Source: Octopus bimaculoides (taxonomy: Eukaryota). Taken from it: a stretch of DNA of 64,000 nucleotides. The notes under the pieces are model-generated. The model was not told where the DNA came from. It searched no databases and saw nothing but the letters and a program-made list of their open reading frames with translations. The stretch is from the NCBI RefSeq assembly GCF_001194135.2, contig NC_068991.1, forward strand, positions 47,586,724 through 47,650,723. The letters are read 5' to 3'. The translations under genes and the position numbers were made by a program. This document shows, piece after piece, positions 7,493 to 46,910 of the stretch (within the stretch, counting starts at the first letter, position 1; each line of letters opens with the position of its first letter).

Positions 7493-7614
7493 TCACCAAA
7501 AATTCATTCTTTTGCGGGTTCTTTCGAGAACGTCTGATATCAAGCTACCACTGGTATCCAAGGACTCAGAAATAGCATGTTCATCTAAAGAGCTTTTTCG
7601 ATGAATTGAGTTAT
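7493..7614 (-). CDS. MDM1: MDM1-like terminal coding exon (YNSIHRKSSLDEHAISESLDTSGSLISDVLERTRKRMNFW*)
   Basis: attttctttcag acceptor in phase 1; TGA at 7495-7493; resembles the MDM1 C-terminus. Confidence 0.85.
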
Positions 7615-25200: not shown

Positions 25201-28200
25201 AAAACAATAATGATAATAATGATGATGATAATGTTGTTGATGATGATGATGATGATTTATTTAAAAGCTATAAAACAATGAAATAGTTGAACAAGTTGAA
25301 ACAAGGGAAAAGTTACCTTAGGTTTTTGTACCAAAGAATCTGTTTTTAAAGGTTTCTTCACTGTGAAGTTTTTCTGATATTCTGTAAACCTCATTGCAGA
25401 ACTTCTAGGCGGACCTAAGCCAGATCTATAGAGCAATCCGAGTAATTTCTGGTGGGGGGAAAAACAAAACAAAACAAAACTAAACTAAGGAATAGAAAAA
25501 ACATGAATGTGAAAAGAACATTTAGTTTCTCAATTGGTTAATTCTGGTCCCTGTCATTAAAAAATGTAATTACATAAGAATTTCCCCTTCTCTCTCCTTT
25601 CTTCCTTCTTTTTTCAACTCCTCTTGCACTCCTTTTATAGTGTTGAAAATTAAATTTAATATAATGTTACATTTAATAAACCTAGATTTCTGACCAAGTC
25701 GTACTGATGAGATCCAGCTAGATTGAAATAGCAGCTATATATATTAAATACTTATAATTAAATGAAAGAAAATTTAATACTTTATAAAGAAATTTAATAC
25801 TATACACCTTTCACTTTGCTAAACAAAAAGAACATGAATTCTTAGCAAGAAGATTATCTCTTTTACTCAAGAGTACACCCAATAAACAGTTCAAAACACC
25901 AGCTGTCCCAGAATTCCTTGTACTAATGAATTGAATACATTATAAACACATATCTGCCATAAAGGACAAGCTGTTCTCCTGTGATGAATACAACAATGAT
26001 TAGTATATTCGCATTGAAATCTATCAGAAATATTAAGAATAAATATGTAAGTTATCACTTTGAATCTCTTTGTTCACTGTGCACATGACAATTTATTATA
26101 AGTTAGCAGATATCAGCATGGATCAGCAAACAGTTAGCTGAAATTATAAATAAGACCATCAGCTCTTGTTAGATTCATAGGTCTGAAGGTGCTTCTGGCT
26201 GACAAGCTATAAAGATGTCAAAACACTGGCTGTCCTAAGAATCTTATGTGCTAATGAACTGAGTGTGTTATGAACACATATTTGTCATAAAAAAGGTGTT
26301 CTTCTGTGACAAACACAACAGTGGTTAGCTTATTCACATTTGAATCTACTGGAACATATCAAGACTAAATAAATATGCAAGGCATTGTGTACGTGTGTAT
26401 ATAATTATTACTTAATAAACACAATATATGTTTCTTTGTGCTACTATTAGTTTCATGTGAGGAAAATATACCAACAATATTTTTAACATGTCTGGTGCCT
26501 TAGCACAATCTTCAGGCACTGCCCACATGGCATAACAAGCTAAAAATAGGACAATAGGATAAGAGAAAAAGCGAGAAAAGGTGAGCAAAAATCGCTATGC
26601 TAATCACATACCTTCATTTCAACACAAGGACAAAAGTAAAGCTACTAAGTTGGCTAGCCATGTATGGGGTTTGAAGGCGAACACCATACTACATATGATA
26701 AACTGGAAAATACAGTTCTATATTTGAGAGATGAGGAATTATGTACATTCTTTACATTTGATGGATATTTCTCCTGATCTTGTTTGTTGTTAACACAACG
26801 TTTCAACTGATGTACTCTCCAGCCTTTATCGGGTGTCCTGGGGGTAATTTTGAACCTGGGTTCTCATTCCTAAGGTATTTTTCTGATGTTATTACTATTA
26901 TTATTATTCCCACAGTCATATGGCATAGTGGTTAAGAGCATGGGCTACTAACCCCAAGATTCCGAGTTCGATTCCAGGCAGTGACCATAATGATAAGAAT
27001 AATAACATCAGAAAAATACCTTAGGAATGAGAACCCAGGTTCAAAATTCCCCCAAGACACCTGATGAAGGAGAGTACATCAGCCAAAACGTTGTGTTAAC
27101 AACAAACAAGATCAGGACAAATATCTGTCAAATGTAAATAACGTAAATAATGGAAACTAGAAAATCGCTGAAAAATCCACACCATAGGTCAACAGATCAA
27201 AATAATGTAAACTATGCGTAACTGAAAGAACACAGATCCTTTCCAGATCAAAGAACTCTACCACACTGCTGAATTCTAGATCTGAAATTTTCAGCAGTTG
27301 TAAACTGGGAGTAAGAAATATGATAGAGGAGAGATTAAAAATAAGGTTACTAACCTCCTGATTGTCTGAATGTTTTGTTGGTGAGGAATTTTCTGATATC
27401 ACAGATTTCTTGACTGGCGATTTCACTGAGTTTACTATTTGTTCAACCTTAAATACATAAATATTAAATGAGTAACCCTTTTTGTTACCATATTTCTTTT
27501 AACATACACTGTTGTTGTTTCAATTAATTTGGAATTTAGTAATATAACTTTGTCGTTACTAAGCTGGTGTTTGGAACATAAATTAATGTGAAATCATGAT
27601 TGAAGGTTTTAATTTAGATCAGTTTAAAACAAGAAGTTTGTATTAAACCAGGGTGGTCTTGGGTACGTCTGTATCAAAAGAGCTAATCATGAATTTAAAC
27701 ATGGTAGGCTTACAGAAAAAATACTAAGTTTTAATCTTATGAATTTTAAGTTCTTAAGAAAACAACATTCTGAAAAATGTACACATATGCACACACTCAC
27801 ACACACACACAAAATGTTTTACTGTTCTAATCTTTACTGAATCAGAATCATTGTTATTTTGTGCTCCTCCATGCAGGCACTTATCCAAGAGTTTGTCCTC
27901 AGATAAGGCTACAAACACAGGCTTCATTTTATCCAGCACAAATTTTGGCAGGGAGTTTTTGTTTGGATTACATTTGTCATCCACCTTTTTTTGATGGACA
28001 CCAGTCACCATAGTCACTATGGTCCATGGACCTGTGCTTGAAAATTCCCCACATGGCTCTCTTCATGGAAGCTTTGTCATTAGGGTGGTTCCTGATGGCA
28101 GTTCCATAATGACCCCGTATGGATAAGATGGCTTTCTGTGTGAGCCTACCCACACCTCCAATACCAGTATACTTTTTGCCATCATCACTGGTGAATGGTT

Positions 28201-31200: not shown

Positions 31201-34200
31201 TGTGTATGCATTTGTGTGTGTGTGTGTATTTCCTTGTCTTGACATCATGTGACGCTTGTAAATGAGTGCCACTGTCATACAAGCAGTGTTGTTCATGGTC
31301 AGACATGCAGAAACATCTCTGGTCATAGGGAAATATTACCTTACATGGAGACAGATAAGGGTTGGCAATAAGAAGGGCATCTGTCCAAAGAAAATCTGTC
31401 TCAATAAATTCTATCCCCAATGCATACAAGAATGAAAAAGTGGACATTAACCCTTTAGCATTTAAACCAGCCATATCTGACCCAAATATTCTACCTGCTT
31501 TATGTTCAAATTGACCAGATTCAGCATTTTACAATGTCATTCTAAAAATAAACAATTATAGCTTTGAAACCTCTACACTACAAGATGATACATGATTAAC
31601 TTTTTTAAAAATGTAAATAAATAAGCGTTATATTTGATAGAGTAATCTGAATGCTAAAGGATTAAAATGATGATGTACAGGAACATAACTAAATATTACA
31701 AGTCATTTGGTTTGCAAATCCACCAATTCCACCTTCCACTGAAAATACTGATCTGTTTCTTCTTATTTTGCATTATATAATTACCTCAAACTCAGAGATT
31801 TCTTTCTCAGCATGATTGTTCACTACACACCTGCTGCCTTTATCTGTAATCCCCTTTGTATGCCGTAAGATCAAAGAAAAAATAGGTATGATAACAAGGG
31901 AGAAGATAAATGTTGGAAGGAGGAAGAAAACAGCCAAGTGCTTCTGCAGATGTGAAACTAGTTCACAAAACAAAGATTTGCAAATATTGGAGAGAAAAAA
32001 GAGAGGCTGTCATTAAGTTTCCAATATGGTCAAATCTGCGTTAACCTTTTAGCATTCAGATTATTTTGTCAAACATAATACTTATTTATTCATATTGTTT
32101 TGAATCAATCAAGCATTATCTCACAACTTCAAGATTTCAACGATGTGATTGTTTATTTTTAGAATAATATTGTAGAGATGGTGTAAGAGGTCCAATCTGG
32201 TCAGTTTGAACATAAAACAGGTGGGATTTTCAGGCCAGATATGGCTGGTTTGAATACTAAAGGATTAATAATGATGTAAATTTAATTACAAAGATGTACG
32301 GACATACTGCTATGAATAAAATGGAAGTGTAAAGGTGCTGGTGGCATGAAAAATACATCCAATACATGTTGTAAAATTGTTCACATTAGGAAGGGAAGTC
32401 AGCTATACAAACAGTGCCAAAGCAGGCACTAGAACACAATGTAGTTCTTGGACCCATCAAACTGTCTTAACCATGTAAAGCATGGAAGATAGACATTAAA
32501 CAGTAATGCTAATGATGAAATGGAATGCAAGGTGTCTGCTCTCAGTTCTTCTTAAAGAAAGCATAACAAATGTTAAAGAAAGATGCAGGTATGACTGTGT
32601 GGCCAAGAAGTTTGCAAGCGTGCAGTTTCAGGTTAGAACCAACTGCACAGTACCTTAGATGTCTTCTACCGTAGCCTCAAGCTGATCAATACCTTGTGAG
32701 TGATTTGAGAGAAAGAAACTGAACAAAACAGGTAACATACATACATAGCTACATACATATATATATGTGTTTGTATACACACACACACACACACACACAC
32801 ATACAAGGGGTGCTGAAAAGTTCCTGGCTTTGGGTAAAAGAAAATACAGGAGAATCAGTTAATTATGATTTTATTCAACGTATTCCCCTTTTTGATCCAC
32901 ACACTTATTGCAGCGTTCCTTCAGCTTTTCTAAACACTGAAAAGAAACCTTGGAAGGTTGGACCTCCAACAAGGCCTTTTGCAATATCCTTAAAGCCAGG
33001 AACTTTGCAGCACCCACTCATTATTACCTACACACGCACACATATCATCACCATCATTTTTACATCCACTTTTCCATGCTTTCATGCGTTATACAGAATT
33101 TTGTTGAGGCAGGATTTTCTATGGCCATATGCCCTTTCTTTCAGCGACCTTCACCTATTTTCAAGTAAGGAAATATTTTCCCATAACCAGGCAGAAGACT
33201 CGGGCCAAAAGGCACTACTTGTATGATGATAGCATTTGTTTACAATTATCAAGCAATGTTATGGCGAGGAGACAATAATTATAATCTACACACACACAAT
33301 GGAATGTAGATGTACTATCAGTTTTCAGTATATATTATACAATTTATCTCACTGTTTCAGTATGTATTATGTGTAAGTTTGCTATTTCAGCTAGTTCGTT
33401 TCTGCACCTGTATTGTACAAATGGAAGGAAGTAGAGACAGACACCAAATGATTTTAATAGAAAAATACGATATAAATAATACCTTTTCATTTGATTTCAA
33501 ATTGTCCAACATTATAGCCTTAGACGATTTTGTAAATTTGCTTGTATCAACAACAGGGGCTGGTTTTAGATCCTTTGTAGCAGGATATTGGTCTTCATTT
33601 TTGTCCTAAAAAAATGCAAATAATTTTGAATATTTATAAACACATTTTCTAAAATATAACAACTGTAATGTGTAAATAGAGTTATGAAAATGGCAGAAAA
33701 CAAGCAACAGAAAGAGTGACTGTGTATGTGCAGGCATTAGTGAGTGGTTAAGAAGTTTACTTCCCAACCACATGGTTTCAGGTTCAGTTTTACTGCATGG
33801 GACTTTGGGCTACAGTTTTCTACTATAGCACCAGACCAACCAAAGCATTGTGAGTGGATTTTGTAGATGGAAACTAAAAGAAACCCATTGTGTATATAAT
33901 GTGTGCATGTGAGTGTATGCATGTATATGTGTGTCTATGTTTCTGTCTTGACATAGTGTGACTGTTGTAAATGATTGTCACCATCATACAATTGGTAGCC
34001 TTCATTTTCAATCTGATTTGGAGAGAGAGATTATAACCAACCTGTGAGATGAAAATATTATTACTTGCATAGGCACAGGTGTGGCTATGTAGTAAGAAGC
34101 TTGATTCCCTACCACATGGTTCCAGGTTCAGTTCCACTGTGTGGCACCCTGGGCAAGTGTCTTCTACTATAACCTCAGGCCAACCAAAACCCAAAGCCTT

Positions 34201-37200
34201 GTGAGTGGCTTTGGTAGATGGAAACTGAAAGAAGCCTGTTGTGTATGTGTGTGTGTGTGTGCGTATCTATGTTTGTTCTCCACCACCACTTGACAACTGG
34301 TGTTGGGTGTGTTTATGTCCCTGTAATATAGCAGTTCAGCAAAAGAGACTGATAGAATAAGTACCAGGCTTTAAAAGAAAATTCCTTGGGTCAATTTGTT
34401 TGACTAAAACCCTTCAAGGTGGTGCCCCAGCATGGCTACAGTCAAATGACTGAAACAAGTAAAAGCTAAAAGAACCCAGTTCTTGCTTCTTTCAACACTT
34501 ACAAAATCATGTTCAGTTTCAGCACTTTTGCTCAGCATATTGTTCATTCTTTTCTTTTGTTTGTAGACAACATTTTCAGAAAACTTTGCTTGATTTCCAA
34601 GAAGTATATATTCTTCCTCATCAGGTAGTGCCCCTCCATAGGAATGTACAGGAACTGTTCTATTTGTATGATTTTTTTCAATGTTTTCCATTTGCATCTG
34701 AGAAAAAAATTATAAAACCAGAAGAATAGACATAAACTATTGTTAATAAATCACTCACTCTAAATCAGAGACATTAATCAATCATAGACTATCAATCAAT
34801 GAGTGAGAAATACACTGCCAGTATGTTCTTTCCTAATGTAAGACACTTGGGTGAAATATAAGGGAAAATTAGCTGCTGTTTGTAATAGATTGAATTACAA
34901 TTGTTTGTACAGAGAGTGGATATGAGTTACTTACAGCAGATGTGATAGGTAGAGGGTCAAAGGGCTAACAAGGTTTAATTAGACACATACATTACAAATG
35001 TGTGTGTGTGTGTGTATGATGAGCTTCTTTCAGTTTCCATCGAACAAATCTGGTCACAGGACTGTTGTTAAAATCATTATTGTTAAAATAGCATTATTAA
35101 TGATGTACTGAGGGCAGTGGATTGTCAGAATCATTAGATTATTGATAAGAATGCTTTGTGGTTTTTCTTCTGACACTTTATGTCCCTGGTTCAAATCCCA
35201 CCAAGGTCAACTTGTCTTTCATATTTTCAGGGTTGATAAAATAAAGTACCAGTGAAGTACTGGGGCTGATGGTATCAATTAATCCTCTTTTCTCCATCTG
35301 CCTAAGTTAGAAACCATGAATACTGATGTTATTCATTAATTGAATTAGTTGAATTATTTCACTTCATGATAGAGCTTTGATATGGTCCCTTGTTATGTTA
35401 GAAATTGCAAACAAATCTCCTTATAATTATATCCTATTCTTTCAAACAACAAAAATGTCTTAGATGGTCTGATACAATCACACACTCCTGTATTAAACAA
35501 CACTAACATGAACGGAAGTAATAACACAAAACAGAAAAAGAATTCAACAACACAAACATGTAGTTTTGTGTGAGTGTTTTGTAAAATCAGGAAGTGAAAA
35601 AAGAAGTGAATAGAGTTAAAGATGTAGACATCACAGTGAATAACAATCATTGCTTGATTTAACTGAAAAGGGATAATAGTCATGTTGAAACTTTCAAAAC
35701 AAATCATAAATATTATATTATGAAAATATATCCAGACTAGAATTAAGATTGTACAAATCATTTCAAACTGAACAAAAAGGTTATATAAATATATATATAT
35801 AGTTCAAATTTACAGAAAACAAAAGACAAAGACAGATGAAGGAACAAGCAGGTGTATTAGTTTGATGCTCAGGAAGAATAGAAAAGTCTTTGATGTTTCA
35901 AGCCTACGCTCTTCAACAGAAAGAATTGAGAGCAAAAAAAAGGAGAGAAAACACAAAACAACAGAGAAAGAAAAAAATGTGTAGGAATCAAAGGTTCAAC
36001 ATGATGAAATAGCTGGAAGAAAGAGGCTGAGTGAAAGGGAGATAGTAACAGTGACTTGGCCAAACTCGGGTGTGCAAGCACATATGTGTATGTGGAAAGG
36101 GTGTGTGAGTGTGTATGTGTGGATGGGGGCAAGCGTGTATAAATATATGTGTGGGTGNNNNNNNNNNNNNNNNNNNNNNNNNNNNNNNNNNNNNNNNNNN
36201 NNNNNNNNNNNNNNNNNNNNNNNNNNNNNNNNNNNNNNNNNNNNNNNNNNNNNNNNNNNNNNNNNNNNNNNNNNNNNNNNNNNNNNNNNNNNNNNNNNNN
36301 NNNNNNNNNNNNNNNNNNNNNNNNNNNNNNNNNNNNNNNNNNNNNNNNNNNNNNNNNNNNNNNNNNNNNNNNNNNNNNNNNNNNNNNNNNNNNNNNNNNN
36401 NNNNNNNNNNNNNNNNNNNNNNNNNNNNNNNNNNNNNNNNNNNNNNNNNNNNNNNNNNNNNNNNNNNNNNNNNNNNNNNNNNNNNNNNNNNNNNNNNNNN
36501 NNNNNNNNNNNNNNNNNNNNNNNNNNNNNNNNNNNNNNNNNNNNNNNNNNNNNNNNNNNNNNNNNNNNNNNNNNNNNNNNNNNNNNNNNNNNNNNNNNNN
36601 NNNNNNNNNNNNNNNNNNNNNNNNNNNNNNNNNNNNNNNNNNNNNNNNNNNNNNNNNNNNNNNNNNNNNNNNNNNNNNNNNNNNNNNNNNNNNNNNNNNN
36701 NNNNNNNNNNNNNNNNNNNNNNNNNNNNNNNNNNNNNNNNNNNNNNNNNNNNNNNNNNNNNNNNNNNNNNNNNNNNNNNNNNNNNNNNNNNNNNNNNNNN
36801 NNNNNNNNNNNNNNNNNNNNNNNNNNNNNNNNNNNNNNNNNNNNNNNNNNNNNNNNNNNNNNNNNNNNNNNNNNNNNNNNNNNNNNNNNNNNNNNNNNNN
36901 NNNNNNNNNNNNNNNNNNNNNNNNNNNNNNNNNNNNNNNNNNNNNNNNNNNNNNNNNNNNNNNNNNNNNNNNNNNNNNNNNNNNNNNNNNNNNNNNNNNN
37001 NNNNNNNNNNNNNNNNNNNNNNNNNNNNNNNNNNNNNNNNTGCATCAACTTGCTATAAAAGCAGGTAGTAATTTTACCTTGTACTTATTCTTAGTGCAAG
37101 TTTTAAAGAGTGCAGTTCGATTTTAACAGTTATTTTCTCAAAGCTATAATGGAAGTGACAAAGGAGCATATTCGGCATATTTTGCTTTATGAGTTCAATA

Positions 37201-40200
37201 AAGGCAACAACGCAATGGAAAGTGCGAGGAATATTAATGAAGTATATGGAAATCAGACAATAAGTTTAAGCCAGTGTTAATGATGGTTCCAGAAATTCTG
37301 AGCCGGAAACTACAGCCTAGAAGACAAGCCTTGTCCTGGAAGATCTGTAGAGCTTGGCGAGGATGTCCTGCAAACCCTGGTGGAACAGATCCTATTGTAA
37401 CTGTTGAGGAACTAGCAGAAAAACTTGGATTTGGTCATTCAACCATTCATTGACACCTGCGTGCCATTGGGTTCCTCACAAACTTTCCGAGTCTAATCAT
37501 GTGCAGAGAGTAAATGTGTGCTCCTCTTTGCTGTCACATCTCATGAATGAACCTTTTTTGGAATGAATAGTGACTGGTGATGAGAAATGGGTTCTCTATA
37601 AAAATGTCAAATGCTGAAGACAGTGGGTAGGGAAAGGAAAAACACCAGCACTCCAGGCTAAAGGTCTTCACCTGCGTAAAGTGTTGTTATCTGTTTGGTA
37701 GGATATGAAAGATTTAGTCCACTTTGAACTTTTAAGCTCAAACCAAATGATAACAAAGGAGATCTACTGCGAGCAGCTTAAGTCAGCACTAGAAGAAAGA
37801 CGACCATCTTTGGTTTCAAGACGAAAGGTGTTATTCCATCAGGATAATGCTCAACCACATACAGTGAGGATGACATTCTAAAGGCTGGAGCAGCTTGAAT
37901 GGGAAACAATGCCCCACCCACCATATTCGCCAGACATTGCCCCATCAGATTATCATTTATTCCACAGTATGAGGCTTGGAAGAGGCATTCTTGATTCAAC
38001 TGTCACTTCCTAGCCAAAGGAGAGAAGGTGATATTTCAGTCAGGACTGTCTAAATGAAGAAAGTACAAAGCTAGTCAGCTCTGAAGAGCAGCTGTTACTG
38101 TAGTGGTATTAGAAAAGTTAGAGTGGAGACAGTATGTTTTTTGGTCAGAAGATGAAAGGTGATGATAAGTGACTTTATGTTAATCAACTAGGTGGCAGAT
38201 TTGGGGTGCGGTCAAGAATGTTTGTACATGTATCAGCAACACCATCCTAGATGTAGGAGTCATACTCCATTGTGGGTCTTACCTGAGCTTTATAAAGGAT
38301 TTCTAGTTTTTTTGTTCAAGTAGAGGAAGGCCAGTCTTTCTCATGAATTTTTTTCCATCTTGAGGATATGTGTTTGCCACAAGATACTCAGTGAGGGTGA
38401 AACTTAGCAATGAGTGACCTCAAGAGATCTTCATGCCTGTTGTTCATGTAAAAGATACTAATGTCTAATCTAAAATTATAGAATAACTTAAGACCAAGAC
38501 AGAGCAAGAATTGTTGATTTTTCAAGTAATCTATATTACTTCCAGATACATCAGTGTCAACCTCCCAGTTATGTCTTTTATGGAGAGTCTAATTCTAAGA
38601 GTGGAGGCGCAATGGCCCAGTGGTTAGGGCAGCGGACTCACAGTCATAGGATCACGGTTTCGATTCCCAGACCGGGCGTTGTGAGTGTTTATTGAGCAAA
38701 AACACCTAAAGCTCAATGAGGCTCCGGCAGGGGATGGTGGCGAACCCTGCTGTACTCTTTCACCACAGCTTTCTCTCACTCTTACTTCCTGTATTTCAAA
38801 GGGTCAGCCTTGTCACACTGTGTCAAACTGAATATCCCCAAGAACTAGGTTAAGGGTACACGTGTCTGTGGAGTGCTCAGCCACTTGCACGTTAATTTCA
38901 CGAGCAGGCTGTTCAGTTGATCGGATCAACTGGAACCCTCGACGTCGTAAGCGACGGAGTGCCAACAATTCTAAGGATATACTGAATTAAATATTGCTCA
39001 GTGACTAAACCGAGAACTCATGACATGGAAAGATTATGACCAACCAATAAGGTGAACATATTACTTAAAGGAACCCAGCAGTTTCCTAAACAGTTCTTGT
39101 TTCTTTCAACACTTACTAAATCATGTTCAGTTTCAGCACTTTTGCTCAGTATATTGTTCATTCTTTTCTTTTGTTTGTAGATAACATTATCAGAAAACTT
39201 TGCATGATTTCCAAGAAGTACATATTCTTCCTCATCAGGTGGTACACCTCCACAGGAATCAGCAGGAACAGTTCCATTTGTATGATCTCTTTCAATCTGA
39301 GTAAAAAAAATTAAAACCAAAATAGTTCAGATATTAAAATCATTCACTATAAATCAGAGACATTAACCAATCACGGTTAATCAGTTAACGAGATTAGCTC
39401 GGCTCTTTATTTCCATATTATGATTCTGTTATGATATAAGAAACAAGCATTACGCGTCCCAAGGTGAAGAGAACACTGCTTCAATTCTAAGAGAGAATAC
39501 ACACATACACACACGTTTGTTTTTATATACAGTTATACCTAAAAACAGTTGCCATTCTTATCACTAAAACTTGTCTGTTTTTCAAATAAGGAATCTTTTA
39601 CTTTACATGACTTCCAAGGTGTGAGATGATCAGCTGACAATAATACTGTTTGGAGTGAGCAACTTTTGCAGAGTGCGTCTGTGTGTGTGTGTGTAAAGCA
39701 GGCTTCTTTTAGTTTCCATTTACCAAATTTGCTCATATGGTTTCAGCTGTCCTGGGGTTAAAGTAGAAGACGTTTGCTCAAGATTGTACACAGTGGAAGT
39801 GAACCATAAACTACGTGGTTGAGAAGCACAATTCTTAAACACACAGACATCAGTATTATGCAGCAAATAGTTACATCATCAATACATAGAAATGACATTT
39901 CCACATTAAAACATCTTCAGGTAGACTCTCTGACCTGGTGATGTCATAATTTTCTAGGTCAAGGGGGAAAAGACAGAATCCAAGAACACTTGTTATTGAA
40001 ATACTGCATTCATTTGGTCATTCAGTTTCTACTACCGCAACAGTTGGTTATCTATATATTTCTGTCTTGATGTTGATGCAGTCTTTGTCCTTCATATGGC
40101 ATGCACAAGAGAAAATAAACTCATTTATTTTCCTTTTTAGATGACATGCACAGGTAGGAAATAAAAACTAGAAAGGCTTACCAAATATTTGACATTATCA

Positions 40201-43200
40201 GAGTTTAGATAATAATGCCAACACACCCTTGGGTGGTAAATGGTATTAACTGAGAACCTGATATTGCTTCCAAGAAGTATGTACTCGTCACTTACATGTG
40301 GATCACAGGAGTCTTCTGAATGAATCTGGTTATCATCATTTTCTTTCTAATTAAGATAAAAACAAAAACAAAAAAAGCAGCATTTAGAAGTCACCATTAA
40401 AATATATAATTACAAAGTTTTTCCTACAAAAAAAAAAGGCATAGTTAATATTTAATTAATTCTGGAAATAGTTATAGCAAGGGTATGAAAACAACATAGA
40501 TACTCTTTTACTTGTTTCAGTCATTTGACTGTGGCTATACTGGAGCAACGCCTTTAGTCGAGTAAATCGACCCCAGGACTTATTCTTTGGATGCCTAGTA
40601 TTTATTCTATCGGTCTATTTTCAGTAAAAGAACATGACTGTAAAACAATGTCTCAACAACATATTTGTTTAATCCATGCAAGCATGGAAAAACAGACACA
40701 AAAACAAATGAAGAATACATAGTTTTACTTATATTTTAATTAATATTGAATAAATAAATGTACAAAAACTTTAAAACAAGCAATACCTTTTTTATACTGA
40801 AATATCTTTTTGGTTTGTAACAGATATTTCCTTCAAACTTTTCGTTTTTTCCCAGCAGCATATAATCCTCATTCAAGTCATGTTCTTTTACTGAAAAGTC
40901 ACTTGATAAACAAGTAACAGGGCCTTCACGTCTCTTCTTTCTTTGTAGACATGGTTCAAACAACACACCTAAAAATTTAAGTGTTCAAATTTAATCCTTC
41001 ATTCAAATATATGAACAGCAAGAAATAGAATAAATGATTTCTGTTGGGGTTAACAATGAGCATTCAGTTATTTGATCAACTGAACTACCTGCTTACTGAA
41101 TTATTGAATTAATGTGAAAGTGGCTGAGTATTCCACAAGCATGTATCCCTTAGTGTAATCATCAAAATGAATCAGCATGACACAGCACAGATGAAGCTGT
41201 GTGGTAAGAAGTTTGCTTCCCAACCACATGATTCTGAGTTCAGTCCTACTGCATGGAACATTGGGCAAGTGTCCCCAGGTCCACTGTGTGGAACATTAGG
41301 CAAGTGGCCCCAGGCCGACCTATACCACATAAGTGAATTAGGTAGATGGAAACTGAAAAAAGGCCCATAGTATATGTATGTGTGTGTGTGTGTCTGTTGT
41401 GTATCCCATGTGTATGTGTGTGTTTTTGTGTTTGTGTTTGCACTCCACCACCACATGACAACTGGTGTTGGTCTGTTTACCAACACCAGTTGTCTCTTTA
41501 ACTTAGTATTCAGCAAAATAAAAACCTGACAGAATAAGTATCACCATTTAGGCAAGTATTTTAGCCCTTAACCTCTGGTATAAGTACTGGGGCTGAATTG
41601 TTTGACTAAACCCTTTAAGGCCATACCACCAGCTTGTCCACAGTCCAATGACTGAAACAAGTAAAAGGTCACAGACAGTATGTGACAAGTCAGGAGGTTT
41701 TAAACATAGATAGTCTATCTGATGAGCTGTCATAGAGTTTCCATCACCTTGATTTCACTCAGAAAGGCTCAAGTTGTGACCTGAAGCTTTGGTAAAAGAA
41801 ATCTTCTCAAAATGCAACACGAGAAGTAACCAACTCTTTACTCTTTTACTTGTTTCAGTCATTTGACTGTGGCCATGCTGGAGCACCGCCTTTAGTCGAG
41901 CAAATCGACCCCAGGACTTATTCTTTGTAAGCCTAGTTCTTATTATATCAGTCTCTTTTGCCGAACTGCTAAGTTACGGGGACGTAAACACACCAGCATT
42001 GGTTGTCAAGCTATGTTGGGGGGACAAACACAGACACACAAACACATATATACATACATATATACGATGAGCTTCTTTCAGTTTCCGTCTACCAAATCCA
42101 CTCACAAGGCTTTGGTCGGCCCGAGGCTATAGTAGAAGACACTTGCCCAAGGTGCTACGCAGTGGGACTGAACCCAGAACCATAATATTTTCATGACTTG
42201 TGAAATTTTGAAAAGTTTACAGTATATCTTAGTAACAAGAAACTGTAGGGAGAGCTGAACAGGAGAGGGTCTTCAGAGAAGAAGCCCACTGCCATGCAAG
42301 TATTTTAGCCCCTAATCTATTGTATATTTTGTCACATACACACAGACATATCCATATGGCTAAAGACTTTTTATTTCACAAGGATGACTTGGCAGTTTGT
42401 TTCATGCTTTTGTTAATTGTTTTAGATGTCTGTGTAGTTGCAAGAAGACGTAGACACCGTTTTGGCTCTCCCATACAAAGAGAGGGAGAGTGGTGGTGGT
42501 GGGGTGGGGCTATATAATACTTGGTTAGTACTCAGTTTCAACTGAGCAGATTGGAGCAATGTGAAATTAAGTAGCTTGCTCAAGAGCACAACACACTGCC
42601 CGATCAAGGAATCAAGCCCAAAACCTTATGACTGGGAAACCAACACTCTAACCACTAAGTCACATACCTTAAGATATTTAAGGTTTGAAAAACAAAACGA
42701 CAACAACAAGAAAAAATAAGGTACCAGTTATATACTGATTTTAATTCAACTGAATCCATCCCTTCCTGAAAAGCAAGTGGCAATATATTAATCAACATTC
42801 TACCAACTAACAAAATGCACTAAATTACTTTAAGAATACAGGACAGAGAAGATTGTTGAAAACACACGTTTTTACATGCGTAATCCTGTCACAACCTGTT
42901 GCAGCATTTTTAATATTTATCAGTCTTTATGAGCACCAGTGTGTTACTGAAAACAAGTTTTTTGGTCTCAATAGAGCTACAATCCTAACAGAATTTTTTA
43001 TTAATTCCAATCACATACTTTTGAATATTTTTTTTTTCTCAATACTTCCAGCTTTCATTTAGATCTCCCTAGGCAGAATTCTTTACTTTTTTTTTTGTTA
43101 TATTAAGTCGGGATGAGTGAGCATTAATTAAATAGCATCTTTTAACTTACTTGCTTCAGTCATTAGATTGTGGCCATGCTGGGACACCACCTTGAAGAAT

Positions 43201-46200: not shown

Positions 46201-46910
46201 TAATACGATATTTAAAATTATAATTGTTGTTTATCTGATAGCAATATCGTGTAATTAAAGTGGGTTACAACCTACCACCTGCAGTAAATAGCATATTTAA
46301 ACACAAGTAAATATTCTAAATAAGCGAGGATAATATACATACATGTATATCTTCGATGAAATTAGTTCGATCGAGGTCGATTATTTTCATATGTAGTATT
46401 CAATACAAAATACGAGCATAATTTCATTTTTTTTAAATAGTTCGTACTGCGATCGTCCCGACCCTAGTTGTCTTCGATATATACATATATATTTTACTTG
46501 TTTTAGTTTAGTGGTCTGTGCCCATTCTGGGGGCACTGTTTTGAAGGGTTTAGTCGAAGAAATCGACCCCGATATTTAGCTTTTTTAAAAGCCTGGTATT
46601 TATTCTATCGGTCATACATACATACAATATATATGAGCATGTTCAGATATGCAACTATATGCATGAGAATACATACATACAAACAAATAAACAGACAAAA
46701 AACCCTGTTGTTGATGTTGAAATTCCAATGAAGGAGCCATGAATCTAGGTTTGCAAGAAACCGGCTCTTACTCTATTGGCAAGAAACCTTGAAATAAAAC
46801 TGAACAATGACATACATACACCTTGCATTATTTTAAATTCGAGTAACTAACAGATGCATACAATAAATGTGTTAAGTATTATTACCTTGCACTTGGCTGG
46901 TGTCCTTCAT
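7493..46910 (-). CDS. MDM1: MDM1 (SAXO6)-like nuclear/centriolar microtubule-binding protein, 19 predicted coding exons, about 991 aa
   Basis: Exons 46886-46910, 40787-40968, 40227-40346, 39117-39296, 34503-34697, 33483-33605, 31785-31853, 29609-29701, 27355-27447, 25317-25448, 22848-23276, 21012-21036, 20233-20278, 19084-19171, 16908-17131, 13910-14502, 13738-13802, 11256-11427, 7493-7614 all have AG/GT ends and phase-compatible joins (2976 nt). Motifs FTEYQKNF, QSEYQRNF, MSEYQKNF, DWYKQVLELRDKAAKYRQRALDSHF, YHLDL and C-terminal ERTRKRMNFW* resemble recalled human MDM1 (SEYQRQF, TEYKRNF, VKELREKAEFYRKRVQGTHF, THHDL, ARAKKRKENFW). Confidence 0.85.
7735..8095 (-). mobile_element. Family B copy with internal tandem units of about 65 bp
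   Basis: ggccacgctc(a/g)aaat(g/a)gtgtattttacgtg is repeated. Confidence 0.85.
10841..11068. mobile_element. piggyBac-type MITE (TTAA-CCCTTTAGCATT...AATGCTAAAGGG-TTAA)
   Basis: TTAA ends and short TIR; further copies at 19586-20176 (SINE-interrupted), 31447-31665 and 32041-32268. Confidence 0.8.
11256..11427 (-). CDS. MDM1: MDM1-like exon 18 (SCDSMFTRAPLFGK...STKEVK)
   Basis: tttcattgtag acceptor, T|gtaagt donor, phase 0 to 1, open frame. Confidence 0.75.
11600..12350 (+). pseudogene. Mariner transposase relic
   Basis: WVP-like, FLTQDE, QWKHPSSP, VLFHQDNAPAHKS and HPPYSPDFAQSDYYLF motifs, with stops and frameshifts. Confidence 0.9.
12488..13321. mobile_element. MITE with about 230 bp TIRs and 8 bp TSD (cagagttc), possibly hAT-type; carries an internal SINE at about 12792-13048
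   Basis: About 12490-12730 and 13120-13320 are near-identical inverted repeats; TSD at 12480-12487 and 13322-13329. Confidence 0.85.
13738..13802 (-). CDS. MDM1: MDM1-like exon 17 (VYHLDLVSKVSENYRRPKQIFK)
   Basis: tttattcttccag acceptor, AAA|gtaagt donor, phase 1 to 0; follows a 107 nt intron. Confidence 0.8.
13910..14502 (-). CDS. MDM1: MDM1-like exon 16, 593 nt low-complexity acidic region
   Basis: Within ORF 13863-14534; ttcttccag acceptor (phase 2), G|gtaagt donor (phase 1). Confidence 0.85.
14750..15200 (-). mobile_element. Highly decayed CR1/L2-like LINE fragment
   Basis: Degenerate RT C-terminal-like translation; many stops. Confidence 0.35.
15421..15758 (-). mobile_element. SINE family A (tRNA-like head, CTTGGGCAAGTG core-like segment, (AAGAGTA)n tail)
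   Basis: Repeated across the window: 34071-34465(+), 41833-42183, 43143-43505, 48053-48455, 54634-55092, 62030-62400 and many fragments. Confidence 0.9.
16908..17131 (-). CDS. MDM1: MDM1-like exon 15 (VTTENISYEDWYKQVLELRDKAAKYRQRALDSHFCSKHMVQL...)
   Basis: Within ORF 16904-17179; taataag acceptor, CC|gtaagt donor; most conserved MDM1 block. Confidence 0.9.
17290..17550. repeat. Long imperfect palindrome (about 115 bp arms)
   Basis: aagagatgacaaaggaataaatg...tgtggactcatag...ctgagtaac is mirrored at 17430-17548. Confidence 0.85.
17579..17867. other. Assembly gap (N run)
   Basis: 289 N. Confidence 1.
17868..18078 (+). mobile_element. Family B copy, near-identical to 5820-6033
   Basis: Direct sequence match. 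Confidence 0.9.
19084..19171 (-). CDS. MDM1: MDM1-like exon 14 (VLMSEYQKNFNSPSKFAYVKNAWVNKDPQ)
   Basis: ttcctttag acceptor, CAG|gtaaag donor; resembles MDM1 SEYRAKFLSPAQYLYKAGAW. Confidence 0.85.
19586..20176. mobile_element. piggyBac-type MITE copy interrupted by a SINE
   Basis: taaccctttagcattcaga ... aatgttaaagggttaa with a (GAT)n-tailed SINE at 19607-19975. Confidence 0.75.
20233..20278 (-). CDS. MDM1: MDM1-like exon 13, 46 nt (SVTSHPELKNDKSPPV)
   Basis: ttttattttacag acceptor, GT|gtgagt donor; phase 1 to 2 bridges exons 12 and 14 exactly. Confidence 0.7.
21012..21036 (-). CDS. MDM1: MDM1-like exon 12, 25 nt (MKRAKSLE)
   Basis: ttttttatctttacag acceptor, T|gtaaga donor, phase 0 to 1. 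Confidence 0.65.
21426..21812 (+). mobile_element. tRNA-derived SINE (family C) with (CAA)n tail and 11 bp TSD
   Basis: A box TGGCCCAGTGG, B box GTTTCGATTCC; TSD agtagctgtat at 21414-21424 and 21813-21823. Confidence 0.9.
22848..23276 (-). CDS. MDM1: MDM1-like exon 11 (NLFHSGSHF...QSEYQRNF...TEPKHK)
   Basis: ttttttcattcag acceptor, AAG|gttggt donor, 429 nt open, phase 0-0; matches MDM1 FHNKSQF...TEYKRNF. Confidence 0.85.
24040..24430 (-). mobile_element. Decayed CR1-like LINE fragment
   Basis: Residual *GLVLG resembling QGSVLGP. Confidence 0.35.
25317..25448 (-). CDS. MDM1: MDM1-like exon 10 (KLLGLLYRSGLGPPRSSAMRFTEYQKNFTVKKP...KPK)
   Basis: ttttccccccaccag acceptor, AAG|gtaact donor, 132 nt; contains a TEY-x3-F repeat. 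Confidence 0.85.
25892..26381 (+). repeat. Diverged direct repeat, two copies of about 160 bp (25892-26051, 26219-26381)
   Basis: caaaacaccagctgtcccagaat...aaatatgtaag versus caaaacactggctgtcctaagaat...aaatatgcaag. Confidence 0.75.
26751..27138. mobile_element. Foldback element: inverted arms with minimal hammerhead-like motifs around a tRNA-like core
   Basis: 26751-26898 is the reverse complement of about 26998-27138; core 26915-26986 has A-box-like TGGCATAGTGG and B-box-like GAGTTCGATTCC; each arm has a decayed CTGATGA-stem-GAAACGTT. Confidence 0.75.
27355..27447 (-). CDS. MDM1: MDM1-like exon 9, 93 nt (VEQIVNSVKSPVKKSVISENSSPTKHSDNQE)
   Basis: atttaag acceptor, GAG|gttagt donor, phase 0-0. 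Confidence 0.75.
27760..29290 (-). mobile_element. Mutator-like (MULE) transposase relic
   Basis: ORF fragments with SCDGSWQKRGFSSKN, YLGDG-D-SK, KYECCGHVQKRMG, GRLTQKAI and LDKCLHGGAQNNN, characteristic of animal Mutator-like transposases. Confidence 0.8.
29609..29701 (-). CDS. MDM1: MDM1-like exon 8, 93 nt (GDEIMCPEKSPVKKSVMFETSSPKNLSDNEE)
   Basis: atttaag acceptor, GAG|gttaat donor; paralog of 27355-27447. Confidence 0.75.
29995..30600 (+). mobile_element. 3' fragment of an RTE-clade LINE
   Basis: LRHILDIKWTDHITN..., WLGHVDRMPDGRIPKDLLYGEL, HFKDICKRD and a C-terminal Cys/His region (GLYSHRR). Confidence 0.85.
31447..31665. mobile_element. piggyBac-type MITE copy
   Basis: ttaaccctttagcattt ... 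gaatgctaaaggattaa. Confidence 0.75.
31785..31853 (-). CDS. MDM1: MDM1-like exon 7, tentative (GITDKGSRCVVNNHAEKEISEFE)
   Basis: GAG|gtaatt donor; only the AAG acceptor after a pyrimidine tract gives phase 0; skippable without frameshift. Confidence 0.45.
32041..32268. mobile_element. piggyBac-type MITE copy
   Basis: ttaaccttttagcattcaga ... gaatactaaaggattaa. Confidence 0.7.
32802..32960. mobile_element. Mariner-type TIR end / MITE fragment
   Basis: TACAAGGGGTGCTGAAAAGTTCC resembles mariner TIR starts after a TA. Confidence 0.5.
33483..33605 (-). CDS. MDM1: MDM1-like exon 6 (DKNEDQYPATKDLKPAPVVDTSKF...KSNEK)
   Basis: ttttttag acceptor, AAG|gtatta donor, 123 nt open, phase 0-0. Confidence 0.75.
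34071..34465 (+). mobile_element. SINE family A copy, abutting MDM1 exon 5
   Basis: Head gtggctatgtagtaagaagcttg, tail gactgaaacaagtaaaag. Confidence 0.85.
34503..34697 (-). CDS. MDM1: MDM1-like exon 5, 65 aa repeat exon (MQMENIEKNH...DEEEYILLGNQAKFSENVVYKQKKRMNN...TEHDF)
   Basis: tttttttctcag acceptor, TTT|gtaagt donor, 195 nt, phase 0-0. Confidence 0.8.
36158..37040. other. Assembly gap (N run)
   Basis: 883 N, between MDM1 repeat exons 4 and 5. Confidence 1.
37149..37970 (+). pseudogene. Mariner transposase relic
   Basis: MEVTKEHIRHILLYEF...IVTGDEKWVLY...VLFHQDNAQPH...HPPYSPDIAPSDYHLF with in-frame stops. Confidence 0.92.
38601..38966 (+). mobile_element. tRNA-derived SINE (family C) with 9 bp TSD
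   Basis: Close paralog of 21426-21812; TSD aattctaag at 38591-38599 and 38967-38975. Confidence 0.9.
39117..39296 (-). CDS. MDM1: MDM1-like exon 4, 60 aa repeat exon (IERDHTNG...DEEEYVLLGNHAKFSDNVIYKQKKRMNN...TEHDL)
   Basis: ttttttactcag acceptor, TTA|gtaagt donor, 180 nt, phase 0-0; paralogous to 34503-34697. Confidence 0.8.
40227..40346 (-). CDS. MDM1: MDM1-like exon 3 (KENDDNQIHSEDSCDPHVSDEYILLGSNIRFSVNTIYHPR); alternative internal donor gives 40296-40346
   Basis: taattag acceptor; two in-frame donors, CAT|gtaagt at 40295 and AGG|gtgtgt at 40226; the extension encodes the EY-LLG repeat. Confidence 0.65.
40787..40968 (-). CDS. MDM1: MDM1-like exon 2 (GVLFEPCLQRKKRREGP...EDYMLLGKNEKFEGNICYKPKRYFSIKK)
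   Basis: tttttag acceptor, AAG|gtattg donor, open frame; EPCLQRKKR resembles MDM1 EPSFISKRR. Confidence 0.8.
41833..42183 (-). mobile_element. SINE family A copy
   Basis: High identity to 15421-15758. Confidence 0.9.
43535..43917 (+). mobile_element. Two tandem copies of tRNA-head SINE family D (GGCGGCGAGCTGGCAGAATCGTTAGC...)
   Basis: 43535-43745 and 43766-43917; relatives at 18682-18890, 21115-21315(-), 35113-35290, 49205-49372(-), 58144-58330. Confidence 0.85.
46886..46910 (-). CDS. MDM1: MDM1-like coding exon 1 (MKDTSQVQ-G, ends phase 1)
   Basis: ttgtttag|aaATG...CAAG|gtaata; phase 1 joins the exon at 40968 to give QGVLFEPCLQRKKR. Start codon is tentative. Confidence 0.55.

What the first reader, a model, noticed from the sequence alone, without database searches (positions are those of the whole stretch)
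34503..40968. MDM1-like protein has gained a four-copy, exon-encoded repeat (EY-x-LLG-x3-(K/R)F-x2-N-x2-Y)
Seen: four consecutive exons encode EDYMLLGKNEKFEGNICY, DEYILLGSNIRFSVNTIY, EEYVLLGNHAKFSDNVIY and EEYILLGNQAKFSENVVY. The last two also share intronic flanks (39300-39390 vs 34700-34800), showing tandem genomic duplication. Exons 3-5 are phase 0-0 and so can be skipped modularly. I do not recall this repeat in vertebrate MDM1. Inference: a lineage-specific module, loosely like the S/T-EY-x3-F microtubule-binding repeats, that may change the periodicity of binding in the centriole or axoneme lumen.
Basis: partly seen in the sequence, partly recalled or inferred. Interest (0 to 1): 0.7.

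Follow-up and report, generated by a model that had tools for sequence, protein, structure and literature searches.

The report
Amplified short motif in octopus MDM1/SAXO6
The octopus version of the microtubule-lumen protein MDM1/SAXO6 carries three to four exon-encoded copies of a 22-residue motif that all other molluscs, annelids and their relatives sampled have at most once and vertebrates lack, so this is a real but modest lineage-specific expansion of an old motif, not a new invention.

Summary
The four peptides are real. All lie on the minus strand in one gene, and the strict pattern appears 0 times in 200 shuffles. The gene is Octopus bimaculoides LOC106870839, the MDM1/SAXO6 orthologue (exons 94-100% identical, most 100%; Pfam MDM1 67 bits).

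The motif (D/E)(Y/F)xLLGx3KFx2N(V/I)xYx(K/R) is not a cephalopod invention. It occurs at most once (once in nearly all) in the MDM1 of gastropods, bivalves, a chiton, annelids, a brachiopod, a nemertean and a bryozoan. It occurs zero times in about 60 deuterostome MDM1 proteins. Only the cephalopod sequences carry 2-4 copies per isoform.

Copy 2 sits in an alternative 3' extension of exon 3. No O. bimaculoides RefSeq model includes it, but O. sinensis models do. It is 85% identical in DNA to Argonauta, against about 50% for the flanking introns.

Copies 3 and 4 come from duplication of a two-exon unit. Its small first exon (A', 18 codons in O. sinensis) maps by colinearity into the N gap at 36158-37040. 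The gap lies in an intron, so no reading frame crosses it.

AlphaFold2 predicts disorder (pLDDT 38.6), so the copies are linear motifs, not a domain. They do not fit the Mn (S/T)EYxxxF signature. Function (extra microtubule or partner contacts, number set by splicing) is inferred only.

The parts
46886..46910 (-). Exon 1 of the MDM1/SAXO6 orthologue: MKDTSQVQ plus the first base of a Gly codon, donor GTAATA. There is no N-terminal Mn motif.
   Evidence: Exact peptide match. Splice sites and an in-frame upstream stop.
40787..40968 (-). Exon 2 (R1). It carries the conserved box FEPCLQRKKRREGP...LSSDF followed by motif copy 1, EDYMLLGKNEKFEGNICYKPKR (40817-40870). Phase 1 to 0.
   Evidence: It is the positional orthologue of the single-copy module in other spiralians.
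40296..40346 (-). Exon 3, short form ('A'): KENDDNQIHSEDSCDPH, ending at the internal donor CAT|GTAAGT. This is the form used in all O. bimaculoides models.
40182..40295 (-). Alternative 3' extension of exon 3 carrying motif copy 2 (VSDEYILLGSNIRFSVNTIYHPRVCWHYYLNSDNVKYL; motif at 40236-40289). Distal donor TTG|GTAAGC, phase 0.
   Evidence: It is included in O. sinensis X1, X2, X4 and X5. It is 85.1% identical in DNA, ungapped, to Argonauta hians, with both donors conserved, against 47-54% for the flanking introns.
39117..39296 (-). Exon 4 ('B', R3): IERDHTNG...EEEYVLLGNHAKFSDNVIYKQKK...EHDL. 180 nt, phase 0-0. Motif copy 3 at 39177-39230.
   Evidence: It is skipped in the older models P0005 and P0018.
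39297..39373 (-). Upstream intron flank of the R3 exon, paralogous to 34698-34784.
   Evidence: blastn and MAFFT alignment. The whole duplicated segment 39091-39373 vs 34477-34784 is 82% identical.
37110..38000 (+). Mos1/mariner-like transposase pseudogene inside the R3-R4 intron. It is not part of the gene product.
   Evidence: Pfam HTH_48 at 1.3e-15 and Transposase_1 at 1.2e-4. The orthologous O. sinensis sequence aligns at 88%.
36158..37040 (-). Assembly gap within the R3-R4 intron. It is predicted to hide exon A' (about 54 nt, NENDDI[EK]KHTEEDSCDPH, AG...GTAAGT) followed by a decayed fifth motif copy.
   Evidence: The O. sinensis A' exon lies at L003 about 17805-17858. That falls inside the only unaligned stretch (17611-18093) between the two colinear blocks that abut the gap edges. 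A' is also in the O. vulgaris protein P0016. No A' is present in the readable window sequence.
34503..34697 (-). Exon ('B'', R4): MQMENIEKNHTNR...EEEYILLGNQAKFSENVVYKQKK...EHDF. 195 nt, phase 0-0. Motif copy 4 at 34563-34616.
   Evidence: It is skipped together with A' in O. sinensis X4 and X5.
33480..33605 (-). Next constitutive exon (DKNEDQYPATKDLKPAPVVDTSKF...). It is conserved in all cephalopod sequences.
25308..25451 (-). Exon with the first canonical Mn motif, TEYQKNF.
22845..23279 (-). Exon with the second Mn motif, SEYQRNF.
19081..19170 (-). Exon with the third Mn motif, SEYQKNF.
16907..17134 (-). Exon with the conserved MDM1 box DWYKQVLELRDKAAKYRQRALDSHFCSKHMVQL.
7496..7612 (-). Last coding exon (...SLISDVLERTRKRMNFW, then stop).

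Best explanation
The window holds the Octopus bimaculoides orthologue of MDM1/SAXO6, a disordered microtubule-inner and centriole-lumen protein. The gene runs on the minus strand from about 46910 to 7496.

Shown:
- Its N-terminal disordered region carries several copies of a 22-residue short linear motif, consensus x(D/E)YxLLGx(N/Q)xKFxxN(V/I)xYxx(K/R).
- In other spiralian MDM1 proteins sampled the motif occurs at most once (once in nearly all), about 25 residues after the conserved EPxLQxKKR box. It lies in the long gap between Mn repeat 1 and Mn repeat 2.
- In cephalopods it was multiplied by tandem duplication of symmetric (phase 0-0) exons. Three positional classes (R1, R2, R3) are shared by octopods and two cephalopod-like transcriptomes.
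- In the Octopus lineage a two-exon unit [A with its R2 extension + B(R3)] was then duplicated to [A' + B'(R4)]. The R2-type extension after A' has decayed.
- Splicing sets the copy number per protein between 2 and 4. R2 is switched by a pair of alternative 5' splice sites conserved to Argonauta. R3, or A'+R4, can be skipped as cassettes.
- The cephalopod proteins lack the N-terminal Mn motif that other MDM1 proteins have.

Inferred, not shown:
- Each copy is a binding peptide that folds only on a partner, most plausibly the luminal tubulin lattice, or else a lumen scaffold protein.
- More copies, spaced 47-85 residues apart, would give more or differently spaced attachment points. This may compensate for the lost Mn1.
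For: Identity of the gene:
- Exons are 94-100% identical (most 100%) to XP_052827741.1 (P0003).
- Pfam MDM1 scores 67.2 bits against a cutoff of 27.
- There are three (S/T)EYxxxF motifs plus the C-terminal boxes.

Motif copies and chance:
- 4 hits in the window against 0 in 200 shuffles.

Distribution:
- A profile search of 1.84 billion representatives gave 66 hits. The named ones are MDM1 of molluscs and the annelid Owenia.
- An HMM count over 228 proteins gave cephalopods 2-4 copies (two UniProt models that start at the R4 exon have 1), other spiralians at most 1, and deuterostomes 0.

Duplication:
- R3 and R4 share exon plus flanks at 82% identity.
- Both exons, plus A', are present in the gap-free O. 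sinensis locus and in the O. vulgaris protein.

R2:
- The extension is 85.1% identical to Argonauta with both donors kept, against 47-54% in the introns.

Transcription:
- Two uninterrupted mRNA-like contigs carry three copies in one ORF: P0006 on L004, and L001, whose near-identical relative P0002 is an intact 917-aa ORF.
- RefSeq isoforms differ by exactly these cassettes.

Disorder:
- AlphaFold2 mean pLDDT is 38.6, with no secondary structure across the repeats.

Missing Mn1:
-.

Context:
- SAXO6 Mn motifs contact alpha-tubulin. The gap between the first two Mn motifs is unusually long, about 32 nm against about 8 nm per 40 aa in other SAXO proteins (PMC13087473).
- MDM1 with all four Mn motifs mutated still binds microtubules partly, so other sequences contribute (PMC4626064).
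Against: - No binding data or complex prediction exists for the motif.
- No solved structure contains it.
- It does not fit the Mn signature.
- dN/dS between R3 and R4, and between orthologues, is about 1.2-1.7. The counts are very small (1-3 synonymous changes), so selection on the exons as a whole cannot be shown. Only the consensus positions are invariant.
- R2 is absent from every O. bimaculoides model retrieved. Its conservation could reflect splicing regulation rather than coding.
- RefSeq isoforms are predictions. I could not inspect octopus RNA reads.
- The species behind the three-copy transcript contigs is not known.
Confidence: 0.8

Rival explanations
1. The R3/R4 duplication is an assembly artefact. 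Two haplotype or overlapping contig ends were joined across the N gap, so the real gene has one copy fewer.
For: The two copies flank an assembly gap. Gap-flanking duplicates are a known artefact class.
Against: - Similarity is confined to about 300 bp around the exons. It does not extend toward the gap edges.
- The copies differ by 18% and by a 15-nt indel, which is more than I would expect between two haplotypes.
- Both copies are present in the same order in the gap-free O. sinensis locus (0 N in L003), each more similar to its orthologue (92-94%) than to its paralogue (about 80%).
- Both are in the O. vulgaris protein, and two R3/R4-type exons are in Argonauta.
Confidence: 0.02
2. Copy 2 (R2) is not protein-coding in octopus. 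It is an intronic relic whose conservation reflects splicing-regulatory sequence next to the internal donor. The functional repeat number would then be at most three.
For: All six O. bimaculoides models use the internal donor and omit it. The Argonauta model also uses the short form. R2 is the most divergent copy (R for K; 'SVNTIY') and has an odd aromatic tail, VCWHYYL.
Against: - It stays open and in phase with a strong distal donor in O. bimaculoides, O. sinensis and Argonauta.
- Of 17 nucleotide differences between Octopus and Argonauta, counted by eye on the codon alignment, 7 of the 16 changed codons are synonymous and the replacements are conservative.
- The motif consensus Y, G, F, N, Y is kept.
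- Four O. sinensis RefSeq isoforms include it.
- The cephalopod-like transcripts express an R2-class copy constitutively.
- By contrast, the paralogous extension after A' in O. sinensis has decayed and runs into a stop. This shows what an unconstrained copy looks like.
Confidence: 0.25
3. The copies are divergent Mn (SAXO/MAP6-type) microtubule-binding repeats, as the first reader loosely suggested. They would bind tubulin in the same way as (S/T)EYxxxF.
For: - They share an acidic residue followed by Tyr and a downstream Phe.
- They lie in a protein whose known microtubule contacts are Mn motifs (PMC4626064, PMC10973386, PMC13087473).
- Cephalopods lost Mn1 while gaining copies.
Against: - The Mn signature, (S/T)EYxxx(F/Y) or [TS][TS]x4[YF] (PMC4626064, PMC10973386), is not met. 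The position before EY is D/E/N. The residue four after Y is an invariant Gly. The Phe is at +9.
- In other spiralians the motif coexists with four bona fide Mn motifs as a distinct conserved element.
- No helix is predicted.
- The motif profile finds no relative in solved structures.
Confidence: 0.1
4. The motif is a docking site for a non-tubulin partner, such as a centriole or cilium lumen scaffold protein or a modifying enzyme. Amplification would raise avidity for that partner rather than for the microtubule lattice.
For: - It is a short, strongly conserved linear motif in a disordered region, the usual form of docking motifs.
- It is present in Spiralia but absent in deuterostomes, which would fit co-evolution with a lineage-restricted partner.
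- MDM1 is known to bind POC1A/B (PMC11564547).
Against: The POC1 contact maps to a C-terminal segment of MDM1, not the N-terminus (PMC11564547). No candidate partner was identified here. In human MDM1 the Mn motifs needed for microtubule association lie in the N-terminal half, and fragment 1-416 pellets with microtubules (PMC4626064).
Confidence: 0.3

Closest known systems
MDM1 / SAXO6 (Pfam PF15501), the vertebrate centriole-lumen and ciliary microtubule inner protein
   Same: - It is the orthologous gene: Pfam MDM1 scores above its threshold.
- It has three (S/T)EYxxxF Mn motifs.
- It has the WYxxVLELRxKAxxYRxRA...HF box and the C-terminal ...VLERTRKRMNFW tail.
- It is predicted to be largely disordered.
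   Different: - It lacks the N-terminal Mn motif.
- It carries 2-4 copies of an EYxLLG...KFxxNxxY motif that vertebrate and other deuterostome MDM1 proteins do not have at all.
MDM1 of non-cephalopod Spiralia (for example Aplysia, Crassostrea/Saccostrea, Liolophura, Owenia, Lingula, Lineus)
   Same: The motif has the same consensus and sits at the same place, about 25 residues after EPxLQxKKR...GPxTSLS.
   Different: These proteins have at most one copy (one in nearly all), encoded together with the box, and they keep Mn1. Cephalopods have extra copies on separate, symmetric, alternatively spliced exons.
Mn repeats of SAXO/MAP6 proteins
   Same: They are short linear motifs repeated along a disordered microtubule-lumen protein. 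The spacing of tens of residues is of the order of one to two tubulin dimers (PMC10973386, PMC13087473).
   Different: The sequence signature is different and is not met. No helix is predicted and no structural relative was found.
Tandem exon duplication giving alternatively spliced cassette repeats (general mechanism)
   Same: Adjacent paralogous exons share intron flanks, have symmetric phase 0-0, and are skipped in annotated isoforms.
   Different: The duplicated unit here is a two-exon block, and one copy is toggled by alternative 5' splice sites rather than by exon skipping.

Membership tests
MDM1 / SAXO6 | Match to Pfam PF15501 above the gathering score | tested here: met
   P0011 is isoform X1 of the window's gene; its sister isoform P0003 matches the window's exons at 94-100%. 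P0011 scores 67.2 bits against a cutoff of 27, E = 1.8e-18. The cephalopod-like transcript protein built from L001 scores 120 bits.
MDM1 / SAXO6 | At least two (S/T)EYxxx(F/Y) (Mn) motifs in the N-terminal half (PMC4626064) | tested here: met
   There are three: TEYQKNF, SEYQRNF and SEYQKNF, at residues 305, 350 and 498 of P0003. Their exons lie at about 25.4, 23.2 and 19.1 kb.
MDM1 / SAXO6 | N-terminal Mn motif at about residue 9 (MPVxFKxxSEYxxxF) | tested here: not met
   It is absent in all cephalopod sequences. In-frame stops lie upstream of the start Met in the window and in both transcript contigs. No such motif occurs on the minus strand between 41 and 64 kb. It is present in other spiralian and vertebrate MDM1 proteins. 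This is a lineage loss and does not exclude orthology.
MDM1 / SAXO6 | Conserved C-terminal boxes (WYxEVxELRxKAxEYRxRAxGTHFSRxH; ...SLASEVLERAxKRxxFW) | tested here: met
   DWYKQVLELRDKAAKYRQRALDSHFCSKHMVQL at 17134-16907 and SLISDVLERTRKRMNFW at 7612-7496.
MDM1 / SAXO6 | Binds microtubules and localises to the centriole or ciliary lumen | not testable with these tools
   This needs experiments. It is known only for vertebrate MDM1 (PMC4626064, PMC13087473).
Mn repeat (SAXO/MAP6-type), asked of the new motif | Sequence signature (S/T)EYxxx(F/Y) or [TS][TS]x4[YF] | tested here: not met
   The consensus is xEYxLLGxNxKFxxNVxYxxKx. Gly is invariant four residues after Tyr, Phe is at +9, and D/E/N stands where S/T is expected.
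Mn repeat (SAXO/MAP6-type), asked of the new motif | Short helix that docks on luminal alpha-tubulin (S9-S10 loop) | tested here: inconclusive
   The AlphaFold2 monomer model shows no helix and has pLDDT below 50 across the repeats. Motifs that fold on binding would look the same. No complex prediction tool was available.
Tandem exon-duplication cassette | Adjacent paralogous exons with homologous intron flanks | tested here: met
   34477-34784 aligns with 39091-39373 at 82% identity. The two-exon unit is seen in O. sinensis.
Tandem exon-duplication cassette | Symmetric phase, so that inclusion or skipping keeps the frame | tested here: met
   Exon lengths are 51/165, 180, (54) and 195 nt, all phase 0-0.
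Tandem exon-duplication cassette | Alternative inclusion in transcripts | tested here: inconclusive
   RefSeq isoforms of O. bimaculoides and O. sinensis differ by exactly these cassettes. These are model predictions, and no octopus RNA reads could be examined.

The most novel reading that the evidence does not exclude
The 22-residue EYxLLG...KFxxNxxY element is a previously undescribed luminal tubulin-binding module of spiralian SAXO6, distinct from Mn repeats. Cephalopods replaced the lost N-terminal Mn repeat with an array of 3-4 such modules. Their number, and hence the protein's binding register along the protofilament, would be tuned tissue by tissue through alternative splicing.
Probability: 0.2. 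Interest if true: 0.6.

Novelty: new variant of a known kind. Interest (0 to 1): 0.4.

Why it matters
MDM1/SAXO6 has recently been recognised as a candidate microtubule inner protein and a human retinal-disease gene. Apart from its four Mn motifs it is regarded as featureless and disordered.

This analysis shows that outside deuterostomes the long gap between Mn1 and Mn2 holds a second, strongly conserved linear motif. I found no description of it in the two full-text searches I ran on MDM1. One lineage, the cephalopods, multiplied it by exon duplication and placed the copies under alternative splicing, while lacking Mn1.

That gives a natural series of 0, 1, 2, 3 and 4 copies for asking what the motif binds and whether valency or spacing matters.

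On the practical side, the O. bimaculoides gene model is probably incomplete. An 18-codon exon appears to be hidden in an assembly gap, and a conserved alternative exon extension is not annotated.

The finding is a modest evolutionary and annotation result, not a new kind of system.

Tried and rejected
- The first homologue search, with the four concatenated exons, found only one Logan protein and missed the RefSeq octopus proteins. The word index is patchy, so that absence meant nothing. An alignment query recovered them.
- Pfam finds no family for the repeat region.
- PDB sequence searches with the N-terminal module profile, with the motif-only profile and with Aplysia MDM1 gave only chance hits: a designed TPR protein, MAR1 ribonuclease and Pumilio, all with E > 0.1.
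- AlphaFold2 on the four-copy N-terminus (O. sinensis X1, 5-sequence alignment) gave pLDDT 38.6 and no structure. I therefore ran no fold search.
- The exact-protein look-up failed for O. sinensis X2 and X5. The longest isoform, X1, worked.
- dN/dS on R3 against R4 and on orthologues is uninformative: values of 1.2-1.7 from 1-3 synonymous changes.
- Searches for an A'-like exon in the readable R3-R4 intron by tblastn, blastn and regular expression found none.
- The identity matrix of motif cores could not decide whether the R3/R4 duplication predates the Octopus-Argonauta split.
- The species of the Logan runs SRR21372861 and SRR27666058 could not be established.
- The taxon of the unnamed two-copy ORFs P0069-P0079 could not be established.
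- The literature searches found nothing on MDM1 in cephalopods.
- The haplotig or assembly-artefact explanation was considered and rejected.

Full report
**Observation**

The four quoted peptides are encoded on the minus strand at 40817-40870, 40236-40289, 39177-39230 and 34563-34616. The strict pattern [DE]YxLLGx3[KR]Fx2Nx2Y occurs four times in the six-frame translation of the window, only at these sites. It occurs zero times in 200 shuffles.

Each copy sits in an open frame with canonical AG and GT borders. The exons are:
- 40787-40968 (R1, phase 1 to 0)
- 40296-40346, or 40182-40346 with its extension (A / A+R2)
- 39117-39296 (R3)
- 34503-34697 (R4)

The last three are phase 0-0. R3 and R4 share exon plus about 77-87 nt of upstream intron and about 25 nt of downstream intron: 34477-34784 aligns with 39091-39373 at 82% identity, with a 15-nt indel.

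**What the gene is**

tblastn of retrieved proteins shows the window is Octopus bimaculoides LOC106870839. Its exons match XP_052827741.1 (P0003) at 94-100% identity (most at 100%), from the first exon (MKDTSQVQ, 46910-46886) to the last (…VLERTRKRMNFW, 7612-7496).

P0011 (isoform X1) hits Pfam MDM1 (PF15501) at 67.2 bits against a cutoff of 27. UniProt names the protein 'Nuclear protein MDM1'. It has three canonical (S/T)EYxxxF motifs and the conserved C-terminal boxes.

MDM1 binds microtubules through these motifs (PMC4626064). They have since been recognised as Mn repeats (PMC10973386). The human gene has been renamed SAXO6, a candidate microtubule inner protein (PMC13087473).

**The assembly gap**

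The gap at 36158-37040 lies in the intron between R3 and R4, so no reading frame crosses it. The gap-free O. sinensis locus (L003, 0 N) is colinear on both sides. Osin 16651-17610 matches window 37968-37041, and Osin 18094-19956 matches window 36117-34301.

The only unaligned O. sinensis stretch is 17611-18093. It contains an 18-codon exon (A', NENDDIEKHTEEDSCDPH, AG…GTAAGT) that is part of O. sinensis isoforms X1-X3 and of the O. vulgaris protein.

No such exon is present in the readable window sequence. The gap therefore very probably hides an exon, and the O. bimaculoides models that join R3 directly to R4 are probably incomplete.

In O. sinensis, A' is followed in frame by VSDQYILLSSNISGFW… and then a stop, which is a decayed motif copy. 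So the duplicated unit was the two-exon block [A with R2 extension + B]. The assembly-artefact explanation for R3/R4 is excluded. Both copies exist in O. sinensis, and each is closer to its orthologue (92-94%) than to its paralogue (about 80%).

**Copy 2**

The R2 motif lies beyond an internal donor (CAT|GTAAGT) in a 114-nt extension that ends at a second phase-0 donor (TTG|GTAAGC).

All six O. bimaculoides models retrieved omit it. O. sinensis X1, X2, X4 and X5 include it.

In the Argonauta hians locus (L002) both donors and the open frame are conserved. The extension is 85.1% identical to Octopus, ungapped. The constitutive part of the exon is 78% identical, and the flanking introns are 47-54% identical. 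By my count on the codon alignment, 7 of the 16 changed codons are synonymous.

This points to a conserved alternative 5' splice-site switch that adds or removes one motif copy. Direct octopus RNA evidence is still needed.

**Where the motif comes from**

I built a profile of the R1 module (EPxLQxKKR box plus motif) and searched it against 1.84 billion representative proteins. It found 66 proteins. All the named ones are MDM1 of gastropods, bivalves, the chiton Liolophura and the annelid Owenia.

A further homologue search added Lingula, Lineus, Capitella, Dimorphilus, Watersipora, amphioxus, echinoderms, hemichordates and many vertebrates.

I then counted motif copies with an HMM of the 22-residue core over all 228 retrieved proteins:
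- Cephalopod sequences have 2-4 copies per isoform; two UniProt models that begin at the R4 exon have 1.
- Non-cephalopod spiralians have at most one copy. The few with none include partial or N-terminally short models.
- About 60 deuterostome proteins have none.

So the motif is an old, single-copy element of spiralian MDM1. Only its amplification is cephalopod-specific.

Two unnamed transcript contigs are cephalopod-like: they share the MKD…VQFEP start and also lack Mn1. One (L004, P0006) carries three copies in a single uninterrupted ORF; in the other (L001) the ORF is split by a 1-nt frameshift that its near-identical relative P0002 lacks. The copies fall into positional classes R1, R2 and R3/R4 shared with the octopods. 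This suggests triplication before the lineages split. The species of these contigs is not established.

The cephalopod proteins also lack the N-terminal Mn motif that other MDM1 proteins have at residue 9.

**How it probably works**

AlphaFold2 on the four-copy N-terminus gives mean pLDDT 38.6 and no secondary structure over the repeats. This matches the reported disorder of SAXO6 (PMC13087473). The copies are therefore short linear motifs, not a folded repeat domain.

They do not meet the Mn signature: an invariant Gly sits four residues after Tyr, Phe is at +9, and there is no S/T. No Pfam family and no solved structure matches them.

Copies are spaced 47-85 residues apart. In other SAXO proteins Mn repeats are spaced about 40 aa, or about 8 nm. 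The Mn1-Mn2 gap of human SAXO6 is unusually long (PMC13087473). Human MDM1 with all four Mn motifs mutated still binds microtubules partly (PMC4626064).

My best inference is that each copy is an additional attachment peptide for the luminal lattice, or for a lumen partner. Exon duplication would have increased valency after Mn1 was lost, and splicing would tune the number between 2 and 4. This functional step is inference only.

dN/dS on the duplicated exons is uninformative, at about 1.2-1.7 from very few changes. What is conserved is the set of consensus positions.

**Verdict**

The sequence observation is sound. The gene assignment is right. 'Gained a lineage-specific module' should be replaced by 'amplified an ancestral spiralian MDM1 motif'. 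'Four-copy' is a genomic count, and annotated O. bimaculoides isoforms carry 2-3 copies. The resemblance to Mn repeats is not supported.

The gene is already annotated, but I found no description of the motif or its amplification in my searches. I class it as a new variant of a known kind, of moderate interest.

Noticed in passing
window 36158-37040: By colinearity with O. sinensis, the assembly gap should contain an unassembled 18-codon coding exon (A') of the MDM1 gene. If so, the current O. bimaculoides protein models lack it.
   Followed up: yes
window 37110-38000 (+ strand): A Mos1/mariner-like transposase pseudogene (Pfam HTH_48 and Transposase_1 hits, several stops) lies inside the R3-R4 intron. 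The orthologous O. sinensis sequence aligns at about 88%, so the insertion predates the species split.
   Followed up: partly
window 29609-29704 and 27355-27450 (- strand): The same gene has a second pair of paralogous exons: GDEIMCPEKSPVKKSVMFETSSPKNLSDNEE and VEQIVNSVKSPVKKSVISENSSPTKHSDNQE, 59% identical. The first is present only in isoform X1.
   Followed up: partly
window 46886-46910, and minus strand 41000-64000: Cephalopod MDM1 starts at MKD… and lacks the N-terminal Mn motif (MPVxFKxxSEYxxxF) present in other spiralian and vertebrate MDM1 proteins checked. In-frame stops lie upstream of the Met, and no Mn1-like exon is found upstream in the window.
   Followed up: yes
related proteins P0166 (amphioxus), P0022 (Lymnaea), P0048/P0052/P0053/P0054 (unnamed): Other lineages multiplied the neighbouring EPxLQxKKR box instead. 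Amphioxus has three tandem boxes and no EYxLLG motif. Lymnaea and several unnamed ORFs have two boxes.
   Followed up: no
related ORFs P0069, P0070, P0072, P0076, P0078, P0079 (ENA/Logan, taxon unknown): These carry two tandem motif copies in one ORF (NFAVIGPNEKFASSQLYRLRQ … KEYAILGRNEKFQDNVVYPLRK); P0079 also has a TEYQRNF motif upstream. This may be an independent duplication in an unidentified, possibly non-spiralian, lineage.
   Followed up: partly
window 12022-12378 (+ strand): A DDE_3-type transposase fragment (…LFHQDNAPAHKS…PPYSPDFAQSDYYLF…) lies in an MDM1 intron.
   Followed up: partly
window 38590-38960 and 21450-21830: These two regions share near-identical spurious ORFs (MRESCGERVQQGSPPSPAGASLSFRCFCSINTHNARSGNRN…), which suggests a dispersed repeat; by eye it looks like a tRNA-derived SINE, which I did not test. 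(TG)n or (TA)n microsatellites flank the N gaps at 6267-7108, 17579-17867 and 36158-37040.
   Followed up: no
locus L001 (Logan SRR21372861 contig): The transcript contig has a 1-nt frameshift in an A run that splits the MDM1 ORF into two called genes. The 95%-identical P0002 is an intact 917-aa ORF, so this is probably an assembly error.
   Followed up: partly
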